The notes under the pieces were generated by a model. The model had not been told where the DNA came from. It searched no databases and saw only the letters and a list, made by a program, of their open reading frames with translations. Positions 10,942-17,214 of a DNA stretch of 64,000 bases are shown piece by piece. A program made the position numbers and the translations under genes. Each line of letters opens with the position of its first letter. Position 1 is the first letter of the stretch. Origin of the DNA: Epithemia pelagica (taxonomy: Eukaryota > Protista > Bacillariophyta); assembly GCA_946965045.2 (NCBI GenBank), contig OX337229.1, positions 3,906,001 to 3,970,000 on the forward strand, read 5' to 3'.

Positions 10942-11224
10942 GATGAACTAACAAACAACTTGAGATCGGGATGGTTTGAGAGTGTTGTTGTGGTCTTGTG
11001 GTGGGAAAAACGTCTGTCTGATAGCAGTTCGTGACTGAGAAACTGGGGATTCAACGTTGTGGGTCTTGTGGCTTGTGGGTTGTGTGGGTGGTGGGGTTGT
11101 GGGATCTTTTGATTGACGCAGAGGCTTCCCGCCCGGTTTGTTGGTAGGAATGTACCACTGTTTCATGTTTTCTCTGAACGCTGAACAGGTTGTGCCAAGA
11201 GCATCACTCTCCCGGATTGAAAAC

Positions 11225-12031
11225 ATGCGAGTTCAATTCGTGTCCACACTTCTCATATTGATTCTTCATGTTGGATATGGGTTCATCTCATTGACGACTT
11301 TGTCGTCGTTGACGAAATCGAAATCTCAATCAACATGTAAAACGAGTTCCACGTGGCGTATCTTTGCGGATGCCGGCAATGAAGCTGATGGGCAACAGGA
11401 CTCGTCTGGTTCCTCTGATATTCTGAATTCCCCAGCTTTCTTAAGACGCAAACTTGAGGTGCTGCAAAATGATATCGCCAAGGTTGAAGCCCAAGCTGAG
11501 GAAACTCAGGCTCAAATTGATAAAGGCAAAATTGAATGGGGCCCTCAGCTAGAAGCTCTGCAAGAAGAGGTAAGGGGTGACAAAGATTTCCAAGGTGCAT
11601 GAATTTTCTTGGCTCATTTGATCGACTCTATTTCTTGATATCGGGAACAGTACAAAAACATCCAAGACCGAATGAACTCACAAAGCAAACAAGGTGATGT
11701 TATGGCCATTGTACAAGTATCCAGGAAGATGCTCGATGTGTTGGACAACTATGATCGTGCCTTTGGTGCAGTAACACCCAGTACTGAAGAGGAATCTGCT
11801 ATTGAAGCTGAGTACAAAGCTACATATGATGAGTTTTTGAAGACTTTGGCAAAGATTGGAGTGGAGGAAGTGACCACAGTCGGAACAGAGTTTGATTACG
11901 AAGTGCACCAAGCTGTGATGCAAAAAGCTAGCGATGAGTACGAGGAAGGCATTGTTTGTGAAGAGTTTCAAAAGGGCTTCAAGATTGGGGATACTTTGGT
12001 GCGAGCTGCAATGGTGGCTGTTGCGGCATAG
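11225..12031 (+). CDS. grpE: Plastid-targeted GrpE nucleotide exchange factor (intron 11570-11650)
   Basis: Signal peptide ending GYG-F (ASAFAP-like) plus Ser/Thr-rich transit peptide; phase-0 GT-AG intron; LDVLDNYDRA, FDYEVHQAV, EEFQKGFKIGDTLVRAAMVAV. Confidence 0.92.
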
Positions 12032-12380
12032 TTTTTGTTGCTTTCCCCCATCTCGGTGCTATATGAGTACTCCTAGTAGTTTCGGACAATTCGATCGCAA
12101 TCAATAGTAGGTTAGATGATCTTGATGGTGAATTTTCCCTCCAGGGTGAGGTAATGCTACTCCTAGCTAACAAGCAAACTCCTCTCCGATTATCTCCAGG
12201 GTTTCAGTTTACCCGATCTATCATGACCAGTTCACCTGAAAATCTGCTGGTCATTCTTCCAATCAAAACAAAGCTCAAAATTTTACATGAACCCCTCCAC
12301 CAGGTCCGTCGCTGCGATGTTGATGAAATTTTGTTGTTGGATCTTTATGAACTTTGTCATTGTTGGCAGATTTGCGCGAA

Positions 12381-13808
12381 ATGGCTCGAGGTCTCTTGAT
12401 CGTACCGCCATTCATCAAATATAGTGCGGGACCACTGCTGGGTCCCAGTCTCCTACATTCGGCCGCTTTGAATCGTGGACACACCTGTTCTGTTATTGAT
12501 CTCAATGCAAGCCTGATCAAACAGGACAAACGCGTAGCTTTTCGAGAAAGCCTATTTGTAGGAGATCACGACAAACCCACTGGCGCAAATGGCGAATCTC
12601 ATTTGACTCGGGTGGAGGAGACTTTTTTCAGAGACAACATCCTTTCCTTGGACTTTCAGAGGCATGCTGATAAGAAGAAAAGCGTTCAATTTGCGTTTCT
12701 AGACCATGCTACAACAAAGAGTGCAGCATCCAGAATTGCTTCATCCACACCATTCGGAATGATGGCAAAGTCGGCCCTGGCGCAACACTGTGGTAACAAT
12801 CCCGCTCCCCACCTCGTTGGAGTGTCTCTTTTACATGCTGGACAAGTACTTCCAGCGGCGGCCATCTCGGTTCTGGCACGGGAGATTTTTCCTGATGCGT
12901 TGATCGCATGGGGTGGGCCTCATATCTCCGGACTGGGAAGTGCGTTGGAGAAGGATCTAGAGCAACGAGCGTATGCAGCAGATGTGTTTGTGAATGGACA
13001 CGCAGAGAAAACCTTTGTCGATCTATTGGAAATGGCAGCTTCACCGGATAAGTTATCAAAGCTCAAGTCAACCGTTTCGGTTATGAAAGGCAAACAGGAA
13101 TGTTCTCCATTGTCTCCTATTTTTGACAATCTTGATGTATACGACAGGCCTCTTACTCTCCCGGCCCAGTCAACTCTTGGATGCGCTTATGGCCGGTGCA
13201 AGTTTTGCACGTACCCTGCTATTGAACCCGTACCTACAAAACTTCCCCTGGATGTCTCAGTCGGCAGTGTTGTTCGCACCGCGCTTCAAGTGGGTGCCAC
13301 GAAGATTGCAATCAAAGACTCGTTGGCGACACCAACTCGATTGCGACAGATTGGGGACTGTATTGCTGGCCAGGTTGAATGGTCGGCTTGTTCCAAGTTG
13401 AGCAAAAAGTTGGATGTGCATTTGCTTCAATACCTTCGCGATCGAGGTCTGGTCACCCTGGAGGTTGGGCTTGAATCGCTCTTACCAGAAACACAAGTCC
13501 GTGTGGATAAGATTCAACCTCAACATCTATATGAGAAATTTGTGCAGGATGCTTCAACTGTGGAAAATCTTACTCTTGTGGTGAACTACATGACAGGGTT
13601 TCCGTGGGAAGAATCCACCGCTGCCACCCAGAAAATGAATGAGGCACGAGGGATTCTCCACAAATACATGGGATCTCATGGACACTTCGAACACAACTCA
13701 TTTGAACTCGAACGGTTGTCATCAATGATGAAGAACCCATCCGCCTTTGACATTGATAGCAACAAGATACGAAAATGGCCGTGGGCTTCAGTGGTTCAAA
13801 TCAAGTAG
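12381..13808 (+). CDS. Cobalamin (B12)-binding radical SAM enzyme, bacterial type, intronless
   Basis: N-terminus MARGLLIVPPF; B12-binding domain motifs VGVS and WGGPH; STLGCAYGRCKFC (CxxxxCxxC Fe-S variant); KDSL; TLEVGLESL; VNYMTGFPWE. Confidence 0.85.
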   Translation: MARGLLIVPPFIKYSAGPLLGPSLLHSAALNRGHTCSVIDLNASLIKQDKRVAFRESLFVGDHDKPTGANGESHLTRVEETFFRDNILSLDFQRHADKKKSVQFAFLDHATTKSAASRIASSTPFGMMAKSALAQHCGNNPAPHLVGVSLLHAGQVLPAAAISVLAREIFPDALIAWGGPHISGLGSALEKDLEQRAYAADVFVNGHAEKTFVDLLEMAASPDKLSKLKSTVSVMKGKQECSPLSPIFDNLDVYDRPLTLPAQSTLGCAYGRCKFCTYPAIEPVPTKLPLDVSVGSVVRTALQVGATKIAIKDSLATPTRLRQIGDCIAGQVEWSACSKLSKKLDVHLLQYLRDRGLVTLEVGLESLLPETQVRVDKIQPQHLYEKFVQDASTVENLTLVVNYMTGFPWEESTAATQKMNEARGILHKYMGSHGHFEHNSFELERLSSMMKNPSAFDIDSNKIRKWPWASVVQIK

Positions 13809-13960
13809 CATCACAGTTACCCCTGTTGTGGTTTAAAAAGTGTCTATGTATTCACACCAGTTAACCAATCATAGCTCCACGTGACATACCACTTTGACTG
13901 CCGACTGTGTTGGATGTCCCAGCAACAGTCCCAGGCGTGCTCCATCACCATGGATATCAA

Positions 13961-15925
13961 TCATCGGGTCTTGTTGGTTTTTTCCCAAACACCACCGACA
14001 TCATCCATGAGACGATCTAAATCGGCAATAGCACTGTCAGCCACAGAATTTCGGAGCGGCCCTCGATTTTGTCGAGGTTTCCGACCTCCAGTTGGAGCCG
14101 GAGGAAGCGGAGCATCAAACTCGGTGGAACTCAGGTCTTCTTCCGAGGAAGATCGAGAGGCGCGCCCTGGTCGTTTCAAAAAGGATCCGAATGCACGGCT
14201 CTTGCGCCTTGGAGTAGGTGTCTGGTGCTGTTCTTGCGGTGGCATGGGTTCGGCCACGGCCACGGGCAAGCTAGATGACGTTGCGGAGGATCCACCACCG
14301 GGCTGACCAGATCTTCGGGGGTTGCCTTGATTCGACAATAAAGAACGGCCATTTGGCACTGGTTGGTGAATTTGCCTCACACTCGTCGCAGGAGCCGATG
14401 GTTCGGTAGCACCTTGGGGATGAGACCGAGACGAGAGGATTCGTACCGGAGTGGGCGGTAGGGTACGCGTGGAGGACACGAGGGACGGTTCTGGAATGGC
14501 CGCCTGTTGTTGACGCACCGCTGCTTGACGTTGAGCTTGGAGTAACAATTGGACCTGGCTTCGTTGTTGTTCGGATGTGAGGGAGGTAAAAACGGAGGAA
14601 GAATCTTGGGGGGCCTGGCCCACCGCCTCCGTGGAAGGCAGACTCGACTGACTCATTTGGTTGGTGTCGTTGTGGTTGCTATTGCTCATGCGTTCAAACT
14701 TGCGGTCCAAAAGTTTGGAGGAAGCGCCATCCCCCACAACGGACATGGCCCCTGGCCGACTTCGCGTAGCGTGCTCTTGTTGCTGCCGCAACAACTGCTG
14801 CCGTTCTTGTTCCAGCTTTTCAAACTTTTGCTCGGGAGACTTGGTGGGAATGGATCCTTGGCCTGAAATAGCAGTCGCACCAGGTCGACGAGAGGGAGCA
14901 GAACCTGAGGATACCAGCCCTGGAACGGACGTGGCACCCGGACGATTCGCAACTGATCTGTTTTGCACGCGCTGTTGCTCCAATTGTTGCCGTTCTTGAT
15001 CCAACCGTTCGTACTTGCGATCCAAAGGAGACGGCACAGCTTCGGAGCCACGGGGAGCAGCAATCGCCGTCGCTCCGGGTCGACTTGTGGATTCGGACTC
15101 CACTCCAGCCCGGAGTCGCTCCGTTTGCTTAATGACAGAGTCCTCCTCCAAGTTCTGATTCGTTGCGTTATCAGAAGCGTTCGTTGCAGGAGGATTCGTG
15201 GTGATGCTTTTTCGGAGTTGTTCCAATTCTTGACGCTGTTTCACCAACCTCGCTTCACGTTCCCTTATCTGTTCTTCTTCCAATCGTATCCTTTCCTGTT
15301 CCTTTTCCAGTCTTGCCACCTGTTGTTCTCTTTCTTCGTGTTCTCGAAGTAACCTCGCTTGTTCTTCTCGTTCCCGAACCAACCACTCTGGTTCGTTTTG
15401 GCTGGTAGAGCTGTAACTGTCGTTCGTAGTTGTAGTTGTATTCGCCGCCGCCTCATGGTCGGCAAACAATTTATGTTGGAGTTCAATAATTTCCTCCAAT
15501 CGCTCATTGACGAGCGCTTGATGTTCTTTTTCCACTTGACTTTCCCGTTCACGCATCCGGCGTTGGTGTTCGGCATCGACGGCTTGTTCACCAAGATCGT
15601 TCGTGTTGCTGCTCGAATGGAGTTGTGGTGCCGGTTTGGTTTCCCCACAAATTTCACAAGCCAAATAGGAAGACATTTGGTTGAAATAGGTGCAGGTGGG
15701 ACACGTCCAGCCTCCCGTGTCGTCCCCCGATGCCAAAGTACTCGGGATGCCTCCAGTCTGTACTGGCGCGACCATGGTTTGTTGTTGTTGTTGTTGGAAG
15801 TCTAAGAATCCATTGTCTTGTGGATACGTACGTGCCTCTCCCATATCCAAGTTGTAACGATTGTTGATATTTGTTGAAGAAGCTGCAATACCGTTTCCGC
15901 GTAGAAGATCAAGGTCTGCAGTCAT
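13961..15925 (-). CDS. RanBP2-type zinc finger protein with coiled coil and RPGA repeats
   Basis: WTCPTCTYFNQMSSYLACEICG (W-x-C-x2-C...C-x2-C); Glu/Gln/Arg coiled coil; repeated RPGA(T/M)...KFE(R/K)L/M units. Confidence 0.8.
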   Translation of the reverse strand: MTADLDLLRGNGIAASSTNINNRYNLDMGEARTYPQDNGFLDFQQQQQQTMVAPVQTGGIPSTLASGDDTGGWTCPTCTYFNQMSSYLACEICGETKPAPQLHSSSNTNDLGEQAVDAEHQRRMRERESQVEKEHQALVNERLEEIIELQHKLFADHEAAANTTTTTNDSYSSTSQNEPEWLVREREEQARLLREHEEREQQVARLEKEQERIRLEEEQIREREARLVKQRQELEQLRKSITTNPPATNASDNATNQNLEEDSVIKQTERLRAGVESESTSRPGATAIAAPRGSEAVPSPLDRKYERLDQERQQLEQQRVQNRSVANRPGATSVPGLVSSGSAPSRRPGATAISGQGSIPTKSPEQKFEKLEQERQQLLRQQQEHATRSRPGAMSVVGDGASSKLLDRKFERMSNSNHNDTNQMSQSSLPSTEAVGQAPQDSSSVFTSLTSEQQRSQVQLLLQAQRQAAVRQQQAAIPEPSLVSSTRTLPPTPVRILSSRSHPQGATEPSAPATSVRQIHQPVPNGRSLLSNQGNPRRSGQPGGGSSATSSSLPVAVAEPMPPQEQHQTPTPRRKSRAFGSFLKRPGRASRSSSEEDLSSTEFDAPLPPAPTGGRKPRQNRGPLRNSVADSAIADLDRLMDDVGGVWEKTNKTR

Positions 15926-17214
15926 GAGTGTTGGTATCGATGATTCTGTGTGTGGTGGATTACGAGATTCAATTTCCTTCCCCTTCGATCGATCTTATGT
16001 GTGTGTGTGAATACGACAATACCTCTTCCACTTTGTTACGAAGGGAACAGGGATCTGTTTGACACCAAGAGCGAGACATACAACACACAAAAGGCGCTAT
16101 TACACTCTCTCAAAAGAACGAACAACACGTTGGGCGTTCGAGTCCAAGGCTTCGATGCCGCCCCCCACAAAACAGAATGGGCGCCGTCTCTTCTCGCGCA
16201 ATTATTATTGGTGTTTGCTGTGCTATGTGCTACTGAAAGATCAGAGTCCTGGAATTAAAATTTTGAATTTTTGTATTTCTTGGGATATACGAGTATTGTC
16301 GTTTTTTCTTTTAATTCGGCGGGAAAGCGAGGTTGAGACTTCGTTCTCGTGGCATATTGGTAGGGTCACTACCTAGGCTTAATTAAGTCGTGGTATTCCC
16401 ATCCAAAATCCAGCCGATTAGCCTACACCTTAGCCGTACTTTTACATTCTCACAAAAATCCAATCTGCTCTCCATTCCATCTGAGTTTTGAGTCTACTAC
16501 GGAAGACCTTGATTCTCCAAATCCTCGTGCTGGTGCTGGATGGCCTGATGCTGACTACATCGGATCGGTCTCTACCTCTACCGTATTGTAGAGCGCTGAT
16601 GTCTCTTCTAGGAAGATCGCGATGGGTCAGTAGTGTATAATACTATAGATACTATCTACTATCACACTTTTATACCATACTCGTACGTGTAGACCATGGT
16701 CCTACTGAAATATAACTACCACATCCTTTTAACAATTCAAGTATCGAGTATACTCACGTAGAGTTGTAATAGGTCCAGGGCTTAATACAGCAAGTATGGG
16801 TTCCACGCGAAGTCACGAGGGTTGGTAGCTCCTCTAGCCTAGTTGCACATGAAGTTTAGTTCCTTCCTCTTCATTGTGCTGCTGCTGCGTTTGCCTATAA
16901 AACGATTTGGTTTGGAATTGATTGGCCGTTTTAGGTACGAGAGCAATTTGGAAAATAATATAATGATACTGGTCCGTTGACTCCTTGTGAGCGCGAACCA
17001 TCGTACTATACACCAGTTTTTGACTGGTTGTCTCGTTTCCTAGGTGGCAGCATGGTCGTCCTAGAAACGACGACGGTACTCCTTTTGGAATTGAAGCTTG
17101 CGAATCGCTCGCATATTGATAGAAACAAAACAAGCATGTGCAGTTCCTTGCATGACAGGATGAGTCCACTATGCCATCATGTTTGTTTGTAGTTGTGACG
17201 GACATTCTATCAAT

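What the first reader, a model, noticed from the sequence alone, without database searches (positions are those of the whole stretch)
12381..13808. Bacterial-type cobalamin-dependent radical SAM enzyme embedded among diatom housekeeping genes
Seen: an intact, intronless 475-aa ORF with a B12-binding domain (VGVS, WGGPH) and a CxxxxCxxC cluster motif (GCAYGRCKFC), flanked by intron-containing eukaryotic genes. Known: B12-radical SAM enzymes (class B methylases and relatives) are essentially prokaryotic; the recognised algal B12 enzymes are mainly METH and methylmalonyl-CoA mutase, and diatoms get B12 from bacteria. Inference: a horizontally acquired third B12-using activity, possibly a methyltransferase for an unknown metabolite, lipid, RNA or peptide. 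That would matter for B12 physiology. No obvious targeting peptide, so probably cytosolic.
Basis: partly seen in the sequence, partly recalled or inferred. Interest (0 to 1): 0.78.

Follow-up and report, generated by a model that had tools for sequence, protein, structure and literature searches.

The report
Diatom radical-SAM enzyme of bacterial type
A diatom nuclear gene that is really transcribed encodes an uncharacterised radical-SAM enzyme with a vitamin-B12-type domain, whose only other relatives are scattered bacteria and archaea, so it may be a third B12-using enzyme in diatoms, although B12 use and function are not yet shown.

Summary
An intact, intronless 475-aa ORF lies at 12381-13808 (+). 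It carries VGVSLL, WGGPH and a Cys motif (GCAYGRCKFC, CX4CX2C). It sits between an intron-containing GrpE gene and a eukaryotic zinc-finger gene.

It is a genuine, transcribed diatom gene, not contamination:
- An unspliced DNA contig links it to both neighbours.
- A spliced RNA-derived contig covers the whole ORF.
- Its codon usage matches the host.
- Epithemia has an orthologue with an intron and a conserved downstream neighbour.

The protein belongs to a small, uncharacterised family with invariant CX4CX2C. The family occurs in many diatoms and, at 33-40% identity, in only 29 of about 185,000 prokaryotic species genomes, mostly Myxococcota. There it usually lies in variable regions rich in defence and mobile-element genes.

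The fold is the class-B "B12-domain + radical SAM" architecture. The N-domain alone best matches true cobalamin-binding domains and keeps the SxL-x26-GG motif. However, the catalytic core is closest in sequence to AprD4, which does not bind cobalamin. B12 use is therefore plausible (about 0.55) but unproven, and a methyltransferase role is only one option.

A single transfer from prokaryotes is the most parsimonious history, but the tree's root is unresolved (AU p = 0.37). I found no paper describing this family.

The parts
12381..13808 (+). Complete intronless CDS (475 aa + stop) of the B12-domain/radical-SAM family protein
   Evidence: ORF list; 100+ homologues; AF2 model pLDDT 96.2, pTM 0.94; spliced RNA-derived contig covers it colinearly
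12381..13100 (+). N-terminal Rossmann-type, cobalamin-binding-like domain (res 1-240): five strands plus a helical insert of about 90 residues (res 48-140)
   Evidence: Secondary structure. The domain alone best matches TsrM Z 11.4, TokK 10.9, AerR, MtaC, MetH B12 domains. Pfam B12-binding E 0.0017 over res 142-215
12561..12578 (+). Family-specific GDHDKP motif (res 61-66; G61 and D62 invariant, H63 and P66 at least 90%) in the insert after strand 2; role unknown
   Evidence: Alignments A1/A2/A4
12825..12917 (+). SxL (S149-L151) - 26 residues - GG (G178-G179): the nucleotide-tail half of the classical B12-binding signature. No DxHxxG is present
   Evidence: S149, G178 and G179 invariant in 109 sequences. 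The spacing can be read directly from the sequence. The classical motif DxHxxG...SxL...GG is from established knowledge and PMC12931638
13182..13208 (+). Radical-SAM cluster motif C268-x4-C273-x2-C276 (non-canonical spacing)
   Evidence: All three Cys invariant in 109 sequences. It aligns with the AprD4 cluster loop
13146..13805 (+). Radical-SAM partial TIM barrel (res about 256-475) with conserved KDSL, WSACTK, LEVGLE, NYxTGFP, EHNxFELER and WPWAS motifs
   Evidence: Profile vs PDB: AprD4 E 1.7e-11 over res 263-417. VIA-align gives Z 21-23.6 to OxsB, AprD4, TsrM, CysS and MgmA over res 1-475
11158..13983 (+). Extent of the spliced, RNA-derived contig (run X2). It covers GrpE (intron removed), the 350-nt spacer, the whole rSAM ORF and about 175 nt of 3' flank
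   Evidence: read-laying table 8, record 3; joint 11567>11649 GT..AG
11568..11648 (+). 81-nt spliceosomal intron of the upstream GrpE gene (phase 1, in frame with both GrpE ORFs)
   Evidence: Joint in X2; GrpE Pfam E 1.3e-28 on 11672-12031
13961..15925 (-). Convergent downstream gene: 654-aa low-complexity protein with a weak RanBP-type zinc-finger hit. Its orthologue is also directly downstream of the rSAM gene in Epithemia
   Evidence: Pfam (E 0.0012, below cutoff); tblastn 37% identity over about 580 aa at the same relative position in L088

Best explanation
This is a resident, transcribed nuclear gene of a raphid pennate diatom. It encodes a cytosolic two-domain radical-SAM enzyme. The N-terminal domain is a cobalamin-binding-type Rossmann domain, and the C-terminal domain is a radical-SAM barrel whose [4Fe-4S] cluster is held by C268/C273/C276 (CX4CX2C). 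It belongs to a small, uncharacterised family that otherwise occurs sporadically in prokaryotes (mainly Myxococcota; also Verrucomicrobiota, Planctomycetota, some Proteobacteria MAGs and a Nitrososphaerota archaeon). In those organisms it sits in variable regions rich in defence and mobile-element genes, with changing neighbours.

The most parsimonious history is one prokaryote-to-diatom transfer in an ancestor of the diatoms that carry it. This was followed by vertical descent, codon amelioration and, in Epithemia, gain of an intron.

Inferred mechanism: the reduced cluster cleaves SAM to a 5'-deoxyadenosyl radical. That radical abstracts a hydrogen from a still unknown, probably small-molecule, substrate bound between the barrel and the Rossmann domain. 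A base-off, His-off cobalamin as second cofactor is likely but not shown (about 0.55).

Shown: gene reality, transcription, family membership, fold and motif conservation. Inferred: direction of transfer, catalysis, cobalamin use and substrate class.
For: Gene reality:
- The DNA contig of run X1 (9,140 nt) spans 11460-16000 unspliced, and the spliced contig of X2 covers 11158-13983, including the full ORF. An oligo-dT marine metatranscriptome (X5) holds an identical 180-nt piece at 13369-13548.
- RSCU r = 0.64 against other ORFs in the window (their range 0.23-0.79) and GC3 = 0.46. The prokaryotic loci have 56-74% GC.

Vertical descent:
- Orthologues occur in Epithemia clementina (68%), Seminavis, Nitzschia inconspicua, a Bacillariaceae MAG and MMETSP transcripts.
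- Epithemia has an intron and the same downstream neighbour.
- A second subclade lies on a contig whose housekeeping gene has only diatom named hits.

Family:
- 109-sequence alignment with 32 invariant columns, including the three Cys.
- 29 full-length loci among 185,579 species genomes.

Fold:
- pLDDT 96.2.
- Foldseek and VIA-align top hits are OxsB, AprD4, TsrM, CysS, TokK and MgmA.

N-domain alone:
- 10 of the 11 best of 48,161 chains are cobalamin-binding domains, and AprD4 is not in the top 50.
- SxL-x26-GG is invariant.

Phylogeny:
- Diatom clade 99/97, plus the orphan P0052 100/99, grouped with an archaeon-containing prokaryotic clade 96/86.

Prokaryotic context:
- BREX twice, DndB/HNH/integrase, HNH+nSTAND, a Multi_ubiq/E2/JAB-E1 cluster and an OLD-family nuclease.
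- Pooled neighbours hit GmrSD, AriA/GajA/Old, AbiLi and HEC/PDC models.
Against: - Both Pfam domain hits of the window protein are below gathering thresholds.
- The closest characterised relative by sequence, AprD4, is reported not to bind cobalamin (PMC12931638), and whole-chain fold scores tie AprD4 with true B12 enzymes.
- In the N-domain search, the margin between B12 domains (Z 10-11.4) and generic Rossmann folds (Z up to 9.6) is small.
- The cluster motif is not the canonical CxxxCxxC of known B12-radical SAM enzymes.
- The root of the tree is unresolved: constraining all prokaryotes into one clade is not rejected (p-AU 0.914 and 0.373).
- The defence-island impression has no matched control. 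Housekeeping genes also occur nearby, and no partner gene is conserved across the family.
- RNA evidence comes from assembled contigs, so the expression level and transcript ends are unknown.
Confidence: 0.6

Rival explanations
1. One reading: a cobalamin-dependent class-B radical-SAM methyltransferase. It would methylate an unknown metabolite, lipid, RNA or peptide via methylcobalamin and so add a third B12 demand in diatoms.
For: The N-domain alone resembles the cobalamin domains of the methylases TsrM and TokK most (Z 11.4, 10.9). SxL-x26-GG is retained. There are weak NCBIfam hits to PhpK, RiPP C-methyltransferase, KedN5 and HpnR models.
Against: All methylase models score 13-31 bits against cutoffs of 282-700. 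The best NCBIfam hit is a non-methylase lipid model, and the best PDB sequence hit is the dehydratase AprD4. Known B12-radical SAM enzymes also do ring contraction and other chemistry (PMC12931638). The cluster motif is non-canonical.
Confidence: 0.22
2. A cobalamin-independent radical-SAM enzyme whose Rossmann domain is only a structural or substrate-binding relic. It would work like AprD4, for example as a 1,2-diol dehydratase or similar on a sugar-like substrate, and would have no bearing on B12 physiology.
For: AprD4 is the only significant PDB sequence match to the catalytic core (E 1.7e-11). It shares the GC.Y..C..C.YP..EG loop context. It ties structurally (Z 22.1), and it is stated not to bind cobalamin.
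Against: The NCBIfam AprD4 model scores 23 bits against a cutoff of 500. AprD4 has CX3CX3C rather than CX4CX2C (alignment). The N-domain alone matches true B12 binders, and AprD4 is not among its 50 best matches. The cofactor face of the Rossmann domain (loops after strands 1, 3, 4 and 5) carries the family's invariant residues.
Confidence: 0.35
3. Biological role: an immune effector taken over from a prokaryotic anti-virus module. It would make a modified nucleotide or sugar, analogous to viperin. This concerns the role and is compatible with either cofactor scenario.
For: All 7 annotated prokaryotic contexts carry defence or mobile-element genes within 8-10 kb. Pooled neighbours hit many PADLOC models. 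Variable immediate partners include a P-loop nucleotide-kinase-like protein in 6 loci (with a weak pVip-kinase hit), a weak UDG-superfamily hit and an HNH protein. Distribution is sporadic. From established knowledge, the chemistry of AprD4 (radical 1,2-diol dehydration of a sugar) is the same type as viperin's.
Against: There is no match to any defined defence system: PADLOC gives only PDC-M51A at E 0.002. There is no background control for neighbourhood enrichment, and housekeeping neighbours are also present. No partner is conserved, and none is present next to the diatom gene. There are no infection or expression data.
Confidence: 0.15
4. Bacterial contamination or chimeric assembly rather than a diatom gene.
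For: The family is otherwise prokaryotic and the ORF is intronless.
Against: One DNA contig joins it to both eukaryotic neighbours, and a spliced RNA contig runs from GrpE through the ORF. Codon usage and GC match the host. Orthologues lie on Mb-scale diatom scaffolds, with an intron and shared synteny in Epithemia. Caveat: runs X1-X4 come from one study and may include the source data.
Confidence: 0.02
5. Reverse or different history: the family is ancestrally eukaryotic (diatom or stramenopile) and passed to prokaryotes, or diatoms received it via a virus or another eukaryote.
For: The AU tests do not reject prokaryote monophyly with the diatoms outside. The orphan P0052 sits on a contig with long non-coding flanks and may be another eukaryote.
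Against: The family spans at least five prokaryotic phyla, against diatoms plus one orphan. The surrounding superfamily and all outgroups are prokaryotic. Free trees place the diatoms next to one prokaryotic subclade (96/86).
Confidence: 0.06

Closest known systems
Class I B12-dependent radical SAM enzymes (TsrM, TokK, CysS, OxsB, QCMT/MgmA)
   Same: The domain order and fold are the same: an N-terminal five-stranded Rossmann cobalamin domain followed by a radical-SAM barrel. Whole chain Z is 21-23.6; for the N-domain alone, TsrM gives Z 11.4 and TokK 10.9. There is no DxHxxG, as in these base-off/His-off enzymes, and the SxL...GG pocket motif is kept.
   Different: Sequence identity is 10-17% (Foldseek and VIA-align alignments). 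The cluster motif is CX4CX2C instead of CxxxCxxC. A helical insert of about 90 residues with an invariant GDH motif lies between strands 2 and 3. There is no extra C-terminal domain. The protein is found in a eukaryote, and cobalamin binding is untested.
AprD4 (PDB 6FD2), radical SAM 1,2-diol dehydratase of apramycin biosynthesis
   Same: It is the only significant sequence match in the PDB (profile E 1.7e-11 over the barrel). It has a similar size (457 aa) and two-domain layout (Z 22.1), and also a non-canonical Cys spacing.
   Different: AprD4 has CX3CX3C. It scores 23 bits against the 500-bit cutoff of its NCBIfam model. Its N-domain is reported not to bind cobalamin and is not among the 50 best matches of this protein's N-domain.
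Viperin / prokaryotic viperins (pVips)
   Same: They are radical-SAM enzymes shared between prokaryotic defence islands and eukaryotes. Some prokaryotic members of the present family are followed by a nucleotide-kinase-like gene, as pVips often are.
   Different: Only the generic barrel matches (Z about 11.9, res 256-471). Viperin has no Rossmann domain and uses CxxxCxxC. There is no evidence here for a nucleotide substrate.
Known B12 enzymes of diatoms (MetH, methylmalonyl-CoA mutase)
   Same: The cobalamin-binding Rossmann fold of the N-domain resembles the B12 domains of MetH (Z 10.1) and human MCM (Z 8.4).
   Different: They are unrelated enzymes that use His-on binding through DxHxxG. The present protein lacks that motif and adds a radical-SAM barrel. 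It is not listed among diatom B12 enzymes in PMC3476827.

Membership tests
Radical SAM superfamily | Three-cysteine motif for a [4Fe-4S] cluster in the loop after the first barrel strand | tested here: met
   C268, C273 and C276 are invariant in 109 sequences and align with the AprD4 cluster loop. The spacing is CX4CX2C, not the canonical CX3CX2C.
Radical SAM superfamily | Partial TIM-barrel fold | tested here: met
   Z 21-23.6 to two-domain radical-SAM enzymes, and Z 11-13.5 to the cores of MqnE, NifB, viperin and HydE.
Radical SAM superfamily | Pfam PF04055 at or above the gathering score | tested here: not met
   16 bits against 29.5 for the window protein. Most prokaryotic relatives carry the precomputed hit, and the family profile hits AprD4 at E 1.7e-11.
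Radical SAM superfamily | Reductive cleavage of SAM | not testable with these tools
   Needs anaerobic biochemistry.
Cobalamin-dependent (class B / class I B12) radical SAM enzymes | Rossmann-type cobalamin-binding domain N-terminal to the barrel | tested here: met
   For the N-domain alone, 10 of the 11 best PDB matches are cobalamin-binding domains. SxL-x26-GG is invariant.
Cobalamin-dependent (class B / class I B12) radical SAM enzymes | Pfam PF02310 at or above the gathering score | tested here: not met
   18.6 bits against 32.1, covering only profile positions 51-120. Many relatives carry the precomputed hit.
Cobalamin-dependent (class B / class I B12) radical SAM enzymes | Canonical CxxxCxxC motif (as stated for the solved members, PMC12931638) | tested here: not met
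   CX4CX2C in every member.
Cobalamin-dependent (class B / class I B12) radical SAM enzymes | Binds and requires cobalamin | not testable with these tools
   AprD4 shows that the architecture alone is not sufficient.
AprD4 family diol dehydratase (NF033070) | NCBIfam equivalog score and CX3CX3C motif | tested here: not met
   23.3 bits against a cutoff of 500; different Cys spacing.
Named class-B methylase and lipid families (TIGR04072, TIGR04479 PhpK, TIGR03975, NF033712 KedN5, TIGR04367 HpnR) | NCBIfam score at or above the curated cutoff | tested here: not met
   13-36 bits against cutoffs of 282-700.
Known anti-phage defence systems (PADLOC 2.0) | Significant match of the protein to a system component model | tested here: not met
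   Only PDC-M51A at E 0.002 for P0001 and P0056, and nothing for P0115 and P0117. Neighbours do hit defence models.

The most novel reading that the evidence does not exclude
Diatoms domesticated a prokaryotic defence-island radical-SAM enzyme that really uses cobalamin. It would be the first B12-dependent radical-SAM enzyme operating in a eukaryote. It would make a modified sugar or nucleotide with an antiviral or signalling role, linking bacterial B12 supply to diatom immunity.
Probability: 0.08. Interest if true: 0.9.

Novelty: new variant of a known kind. Interest (0 to 1): 0.55.

Why it matters
Diatom B12 demand is currently explained by MetH, with methylmalonyl-CoA mutase as a minor user (PMC3476827). 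A cobalamin-type radical-SAM enzyme that is expressed and conserved across many diatoms, yet not seen in several model species, would add a lineage-specific B12 sink and new radical chemistry in an oxygenic eukaryote.

Whatever the cofactor, this is a clean case of a rare prokaryotic gene from defence and mobile-element neighbourhoods becoming a stable eukaryotic gene. It is a well-defined family (CX4CX2C, high-confidence model) with no known function, and it is directly testable in tractable organisms such as Seminavis, Nitzschia and Sorangium.

Tried and rejected
- **Contamination or misassembly:** rejected by read contigs, splicing continuity, codon usage and synteny.
- **Named family:** all NCBIfam models are far below their cutoffs, so none was adopted.
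- **Defined defence system:** PADLOC gives no meaningful hit for the protein. The large conserved upstream proteins (about 950 aa) are also unmatched.
- **Conserved operon partner to infer a substrate:** profile searches show the sigma-70-region-4 protein upstream in only 8 loci and the kinase-like gene downstream in 6. The other flanking genes are unrelated, so there is no family-wide partner.
- **Proving the diatoms are nested within prokaryotes:** free trees suggest it, but AU tests do not reject the alternative. The outgroup branch is 3.5 substitutions per site.
- **Whole-chain fold comparison to settle B12 use:** OxsB, AprD4 and TsrM are tied. Only the N-domain search was informative.
- **Identifying the orphan sister P0052:** it has no closer relatives than the diatoms and its taxon is unknown.
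- **Literature:** six full-text searches found no paper on this family in diatoms or in defence islands.
- **Earlier scan notes:** nothing relevant.
Full report
**Observation.** The window holds an uninterrupted ORF at 12354/12381..13808 (+), 475 aa from the ATG. Pfam finds both predicted domains, but below gathering score: B12-binding E 0.0017 and Radical_SAM E 0.014. NCBIfam gives only weak, far sub-threshold hits to B12-domain radical-SAM families. The only PDB sequence hit is AprD4. Upstream lies GrpE (Pfam E 1.3e-28), and downstream, convergent, is a 654-aa protein with a weak RanBP zinc-finger hit.

**Is it a real diatom gene?** Public runs of the same organism were laid on 11100-16000.
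- Run X1 gives a 9,140-nt unspliced contig from 11460 to 16000. It joins the ORF to both neighbours.
- Run X2 is RNA-derived, because its 2,744-nt contig skips an 81-nt GT..AG intron in GrpE (11568-11648, in frame). It then runs colinearly through the spacer and the entire ORF to 13983.
- An oligo-dT marine metatranscriptome (X5) holds an identical 180-nt piece inside the ORF.
- Variants in the reads are two synonymous changes and L58P in a variable loop.
- Codon usage (RSCU r = 0.64; other ORFs here 0.23-0.79) and GC3 (0.46) are those of the host, whereas the prokaryotic relatives lie in loci of 56-74% GC.

Contamination is therefore rejected and transcription is supported. The caveats are that these are assembled contigs and that X1-X4 come from one study.

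**The family.** The word search found about 50 eukaryote-like relatives at 45-68% identity. They include Epithemia clementina, Seminavis robusta, Nitzschia inconspicua, a Bacillariaceae MAG and MMETSP transcripts. Identity then drops to about 40% for prokaryotic proteins from Polyangium, Polyangiaceae, Myxococcota and Nitrososphaerota. A 109-sequence alignment has 32 invariant columns, including the three Cys, GPLLGP, GD(H), S149, GG178-179 and KDSL, along with WSACTK, LEVGLE, NYxTGFP, EHNxFELER and WPWAS. The N-termini coincide, so there is no targeting extension.

The scan of 185,579 species genomes returned only 29 full-length members. They include Sorangium, Polyangium, Kofleriaceae, Haliangiales, Sandaracinaceae, Opitutae/Verrucomicrobiota, Phycisphaeraceae and some Proteobacteria-labelled MAGs.

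**Within diatoms.** The Epithemia orthologue has an intron of about 270 nt near residues 151-167, and its downstream gene is orthologous to the window's downstream gene. This indicates vertical descent. A second subclade sits on a 259-kb contig whose coproporphyrinogen oxidase has only diatoms among its named hits. No annotated orthologue from species such as Cylindrotheca closterium or Fragilaria crotonensis appeared, although both are in the database. The distribution therefore looks patchy, but this was not tested at DNA level.

**Phylogeny.** A careful ML tree (57 rows) supports the diatom clade (99/97) and diatoms plus the orphan P0052 (100/99). It also supports their grouping with a prokaryotic subclade that contains the Nitrososphaerota MAG and metagenome sequences (96/86) (quick 96-row tree). 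However, the outgroup branch is very long. AU tests do not reject a tree in which all prokaryotic members form one clade (p 0.914; p 0.373). Transfer from prokaryotes to a diatom ancestor remains the parsimonious reading, since at least five prokaryotic phyla and a prokaryotic superfamily stand against diatoms plus one orphan. It is not proven by topology. P0052 has no closer kin than the diatoms. Its contig has long non-coding flanks, and its taxon is unknown.

**Structure and the cobalamin question.** The AF2 model is very confident (pLDDT 96.2, pTM 0.94). Foldseek and VIA-align place it with the two-domain B12-type radical-SAM enzymes: OxsB Z 23.6, AprD4 22.1, TsrM 21.9, CysS 21.5, MgmA 21.0 and TokK 17.5. 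MiaB and RimO follow at about 18.

A 2026 review states that AprD4 does not bind cobalamin despite its Rossmann-like domain, and that the solved true B12 members use CxxxCxxC and base-off cobalamin (PMC12931638). The family profile's best PDB sequence match is AprD4 (E 1.7e-11 over the barrel), so architecture alone cannot prove B12 use.

I therefore folded the N-domain alone (pLDDT 91.6) and compared it with all 48,161 PDB representatives. Ten of the best eleven matches are true cobalamin-binding domains: TsrM 11.4, TokK 10.9, AerR 10.8, photocobilin 10.7, MtaC 10.3, MetH 10.1 and corrinoid proteins 9.9. Generic Rossmann and CheY folds follow at Z up to 9.6, and AprD4 is absent from the top 50. 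The invariant S149-x-L151, 26 residues, G178-G179 reproduces the spacing of the classical nucleotide-pocket half-motif, while DxHxxG is missing, as in base-off/His-off enzymes. I put cobalamin binding at about 0.55.

**Prokaryotic context.** All seven annotated contexts contain defence or mobile-element genes within 8-10 kb:
- BREX (PglZ, BrxC/PglY) twice
- DndB, HNH, ParB_N, a methyltransferase and an integrase
- HNH with nSTAND-kinase and a transposase
- a Multi_ubiq/Prok-E2/JAB-ThiF cluster with an M78 regulator
- an OLD-family nuclease
- large helicases

Among 131 pooled neighbour ORFs from 25 named genomes, Pfam finds GmrSD, AAA_15/21, integrases, Uma2 and PDDEXK_9. PADLOC finds HEC, PDC, NsnB, AriA, GajA, Old and AbiLi models. 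Housekeeping genes are present too.

The immediate partners vary. A sigma-70-region-4 protein of about 460 aa is upstream in 8 loci. A P-loop nucleotide-kinase-like protein is downstream in 6. Elsewhere there is a weak UDG-superfamily hit, an HNH protein or unknown proteins. The protein itself matches no defined defence system. This pattern fits a gene of variable defence or mobile regions, but there is no control and no conserved system, so I treat an immune role as a minority hypothesis (about 0.15).

**Comparison with the known, and novelty.** The protein works like, and is built like, class I B12-radical SAM enzymes. It fails the membership thresholds of every named family, and it differs by its CX4CX2C motif, a helical insert of about 90 residues with an invariant GDH motif, and its eukaryotic host. 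The held literature lists only MetH and methylmalonyl-CoA mutase as diatom B12 enzymes (PMC3476827), and six searches found nothing on this family. I rate it a new variant of a known kind.

**Verdict.** It is a real, expressed diatom gene of prokaryotic affinity for an uncharacterised B12-domain-type radical-SAM enzyme. Cobalamin use is plausible, methyltransferase activity is unsupported, and the function is unknown.

Noticed in passing
window 11158-13983: One RNA-derived contig (run X2) fuses GrpE and the rSAM gene across the 350-nt spacer (12032-12380). The UTRs may overlap, or there may be read-through. Contigs cannot show a single transcript.
   Followed up: no
window 13985-16000: In the same RNA-derived run, the convergent downstream gene's contigs have about 9 times the word depth of the GrpE/rSAM contig (1402 against 155). 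The two transcript contigs abut at about 13983-13985, so the 3' ends of the convergent genes nearly touch.
   Followed up: no
window 13817-13818: A T>A change plus a 1-nt deletion just after the stop codon is seen in run X2 only. It is probably an allelic 3'-UTR variant.
   Followed up: no
L083:344-1813 (protein P0052, Logan SRR15674825): This orphan sequence is sister to all diatom members (100/99). It is 39-42% identical to them and has no closer relative in 5.8 billion proteins. Its contig has 343 and 482 nt of non-coding flanks with A-runs, so it may be a non-diatom eukaryote.
   Followed up: partly
L085:12390-14601: A Multi_ubiq / Prok-E2_E / Prok-JAB+ThiF gene cluster (a bacterial ubiquitin-like conjugation system) lies 3 kb from the rSAM homologue, next to an M78-peptidase/HTH regulator.
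   Followed up: no
L001:8193-9572, L006:3013-4413, L007:2881-4284, L012:8553-9854, L029:8273-9691, L084:6506-7792: A family of proteins of about 430-470 aa, with an unknown N-terminal region of about 300 aa and C-terminal sigma-70 regions 2 and 4, lies directly upstream and co-oriented with the rSAM gene in 8 Myxococcota-type loci.
   Followed up: partly
L011:6725-9571, L015:6679-9624, L010:1-2486, L014:408-3221: A conserved protein of about 950 aa with no Pfam or PADLOC match lies divergently upstream of the rSAM gene in four Proteobacteria-labelled MAG loci. Similar-sized upstream ORFs in L027 and L032 were not shown to be homologous.
   Followed up: partly
pooled neighbour set A3 (25 prokaryotic loci): Two neighbour ORFs match the PADLOC candidate PDC-M55A at E 1.5e-122. 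I did not identify which loci carry them.
   Followed up: no
L090:6001-7552 (Nitzschia inconspicua): The annotated protein lacks the conserved N-terminal strand (it starts at ...YTAGPLLGP). The model joins a lone Met codon over a 136-nt 'intron', which is probably a mis-annotated start.
   Followed up: no
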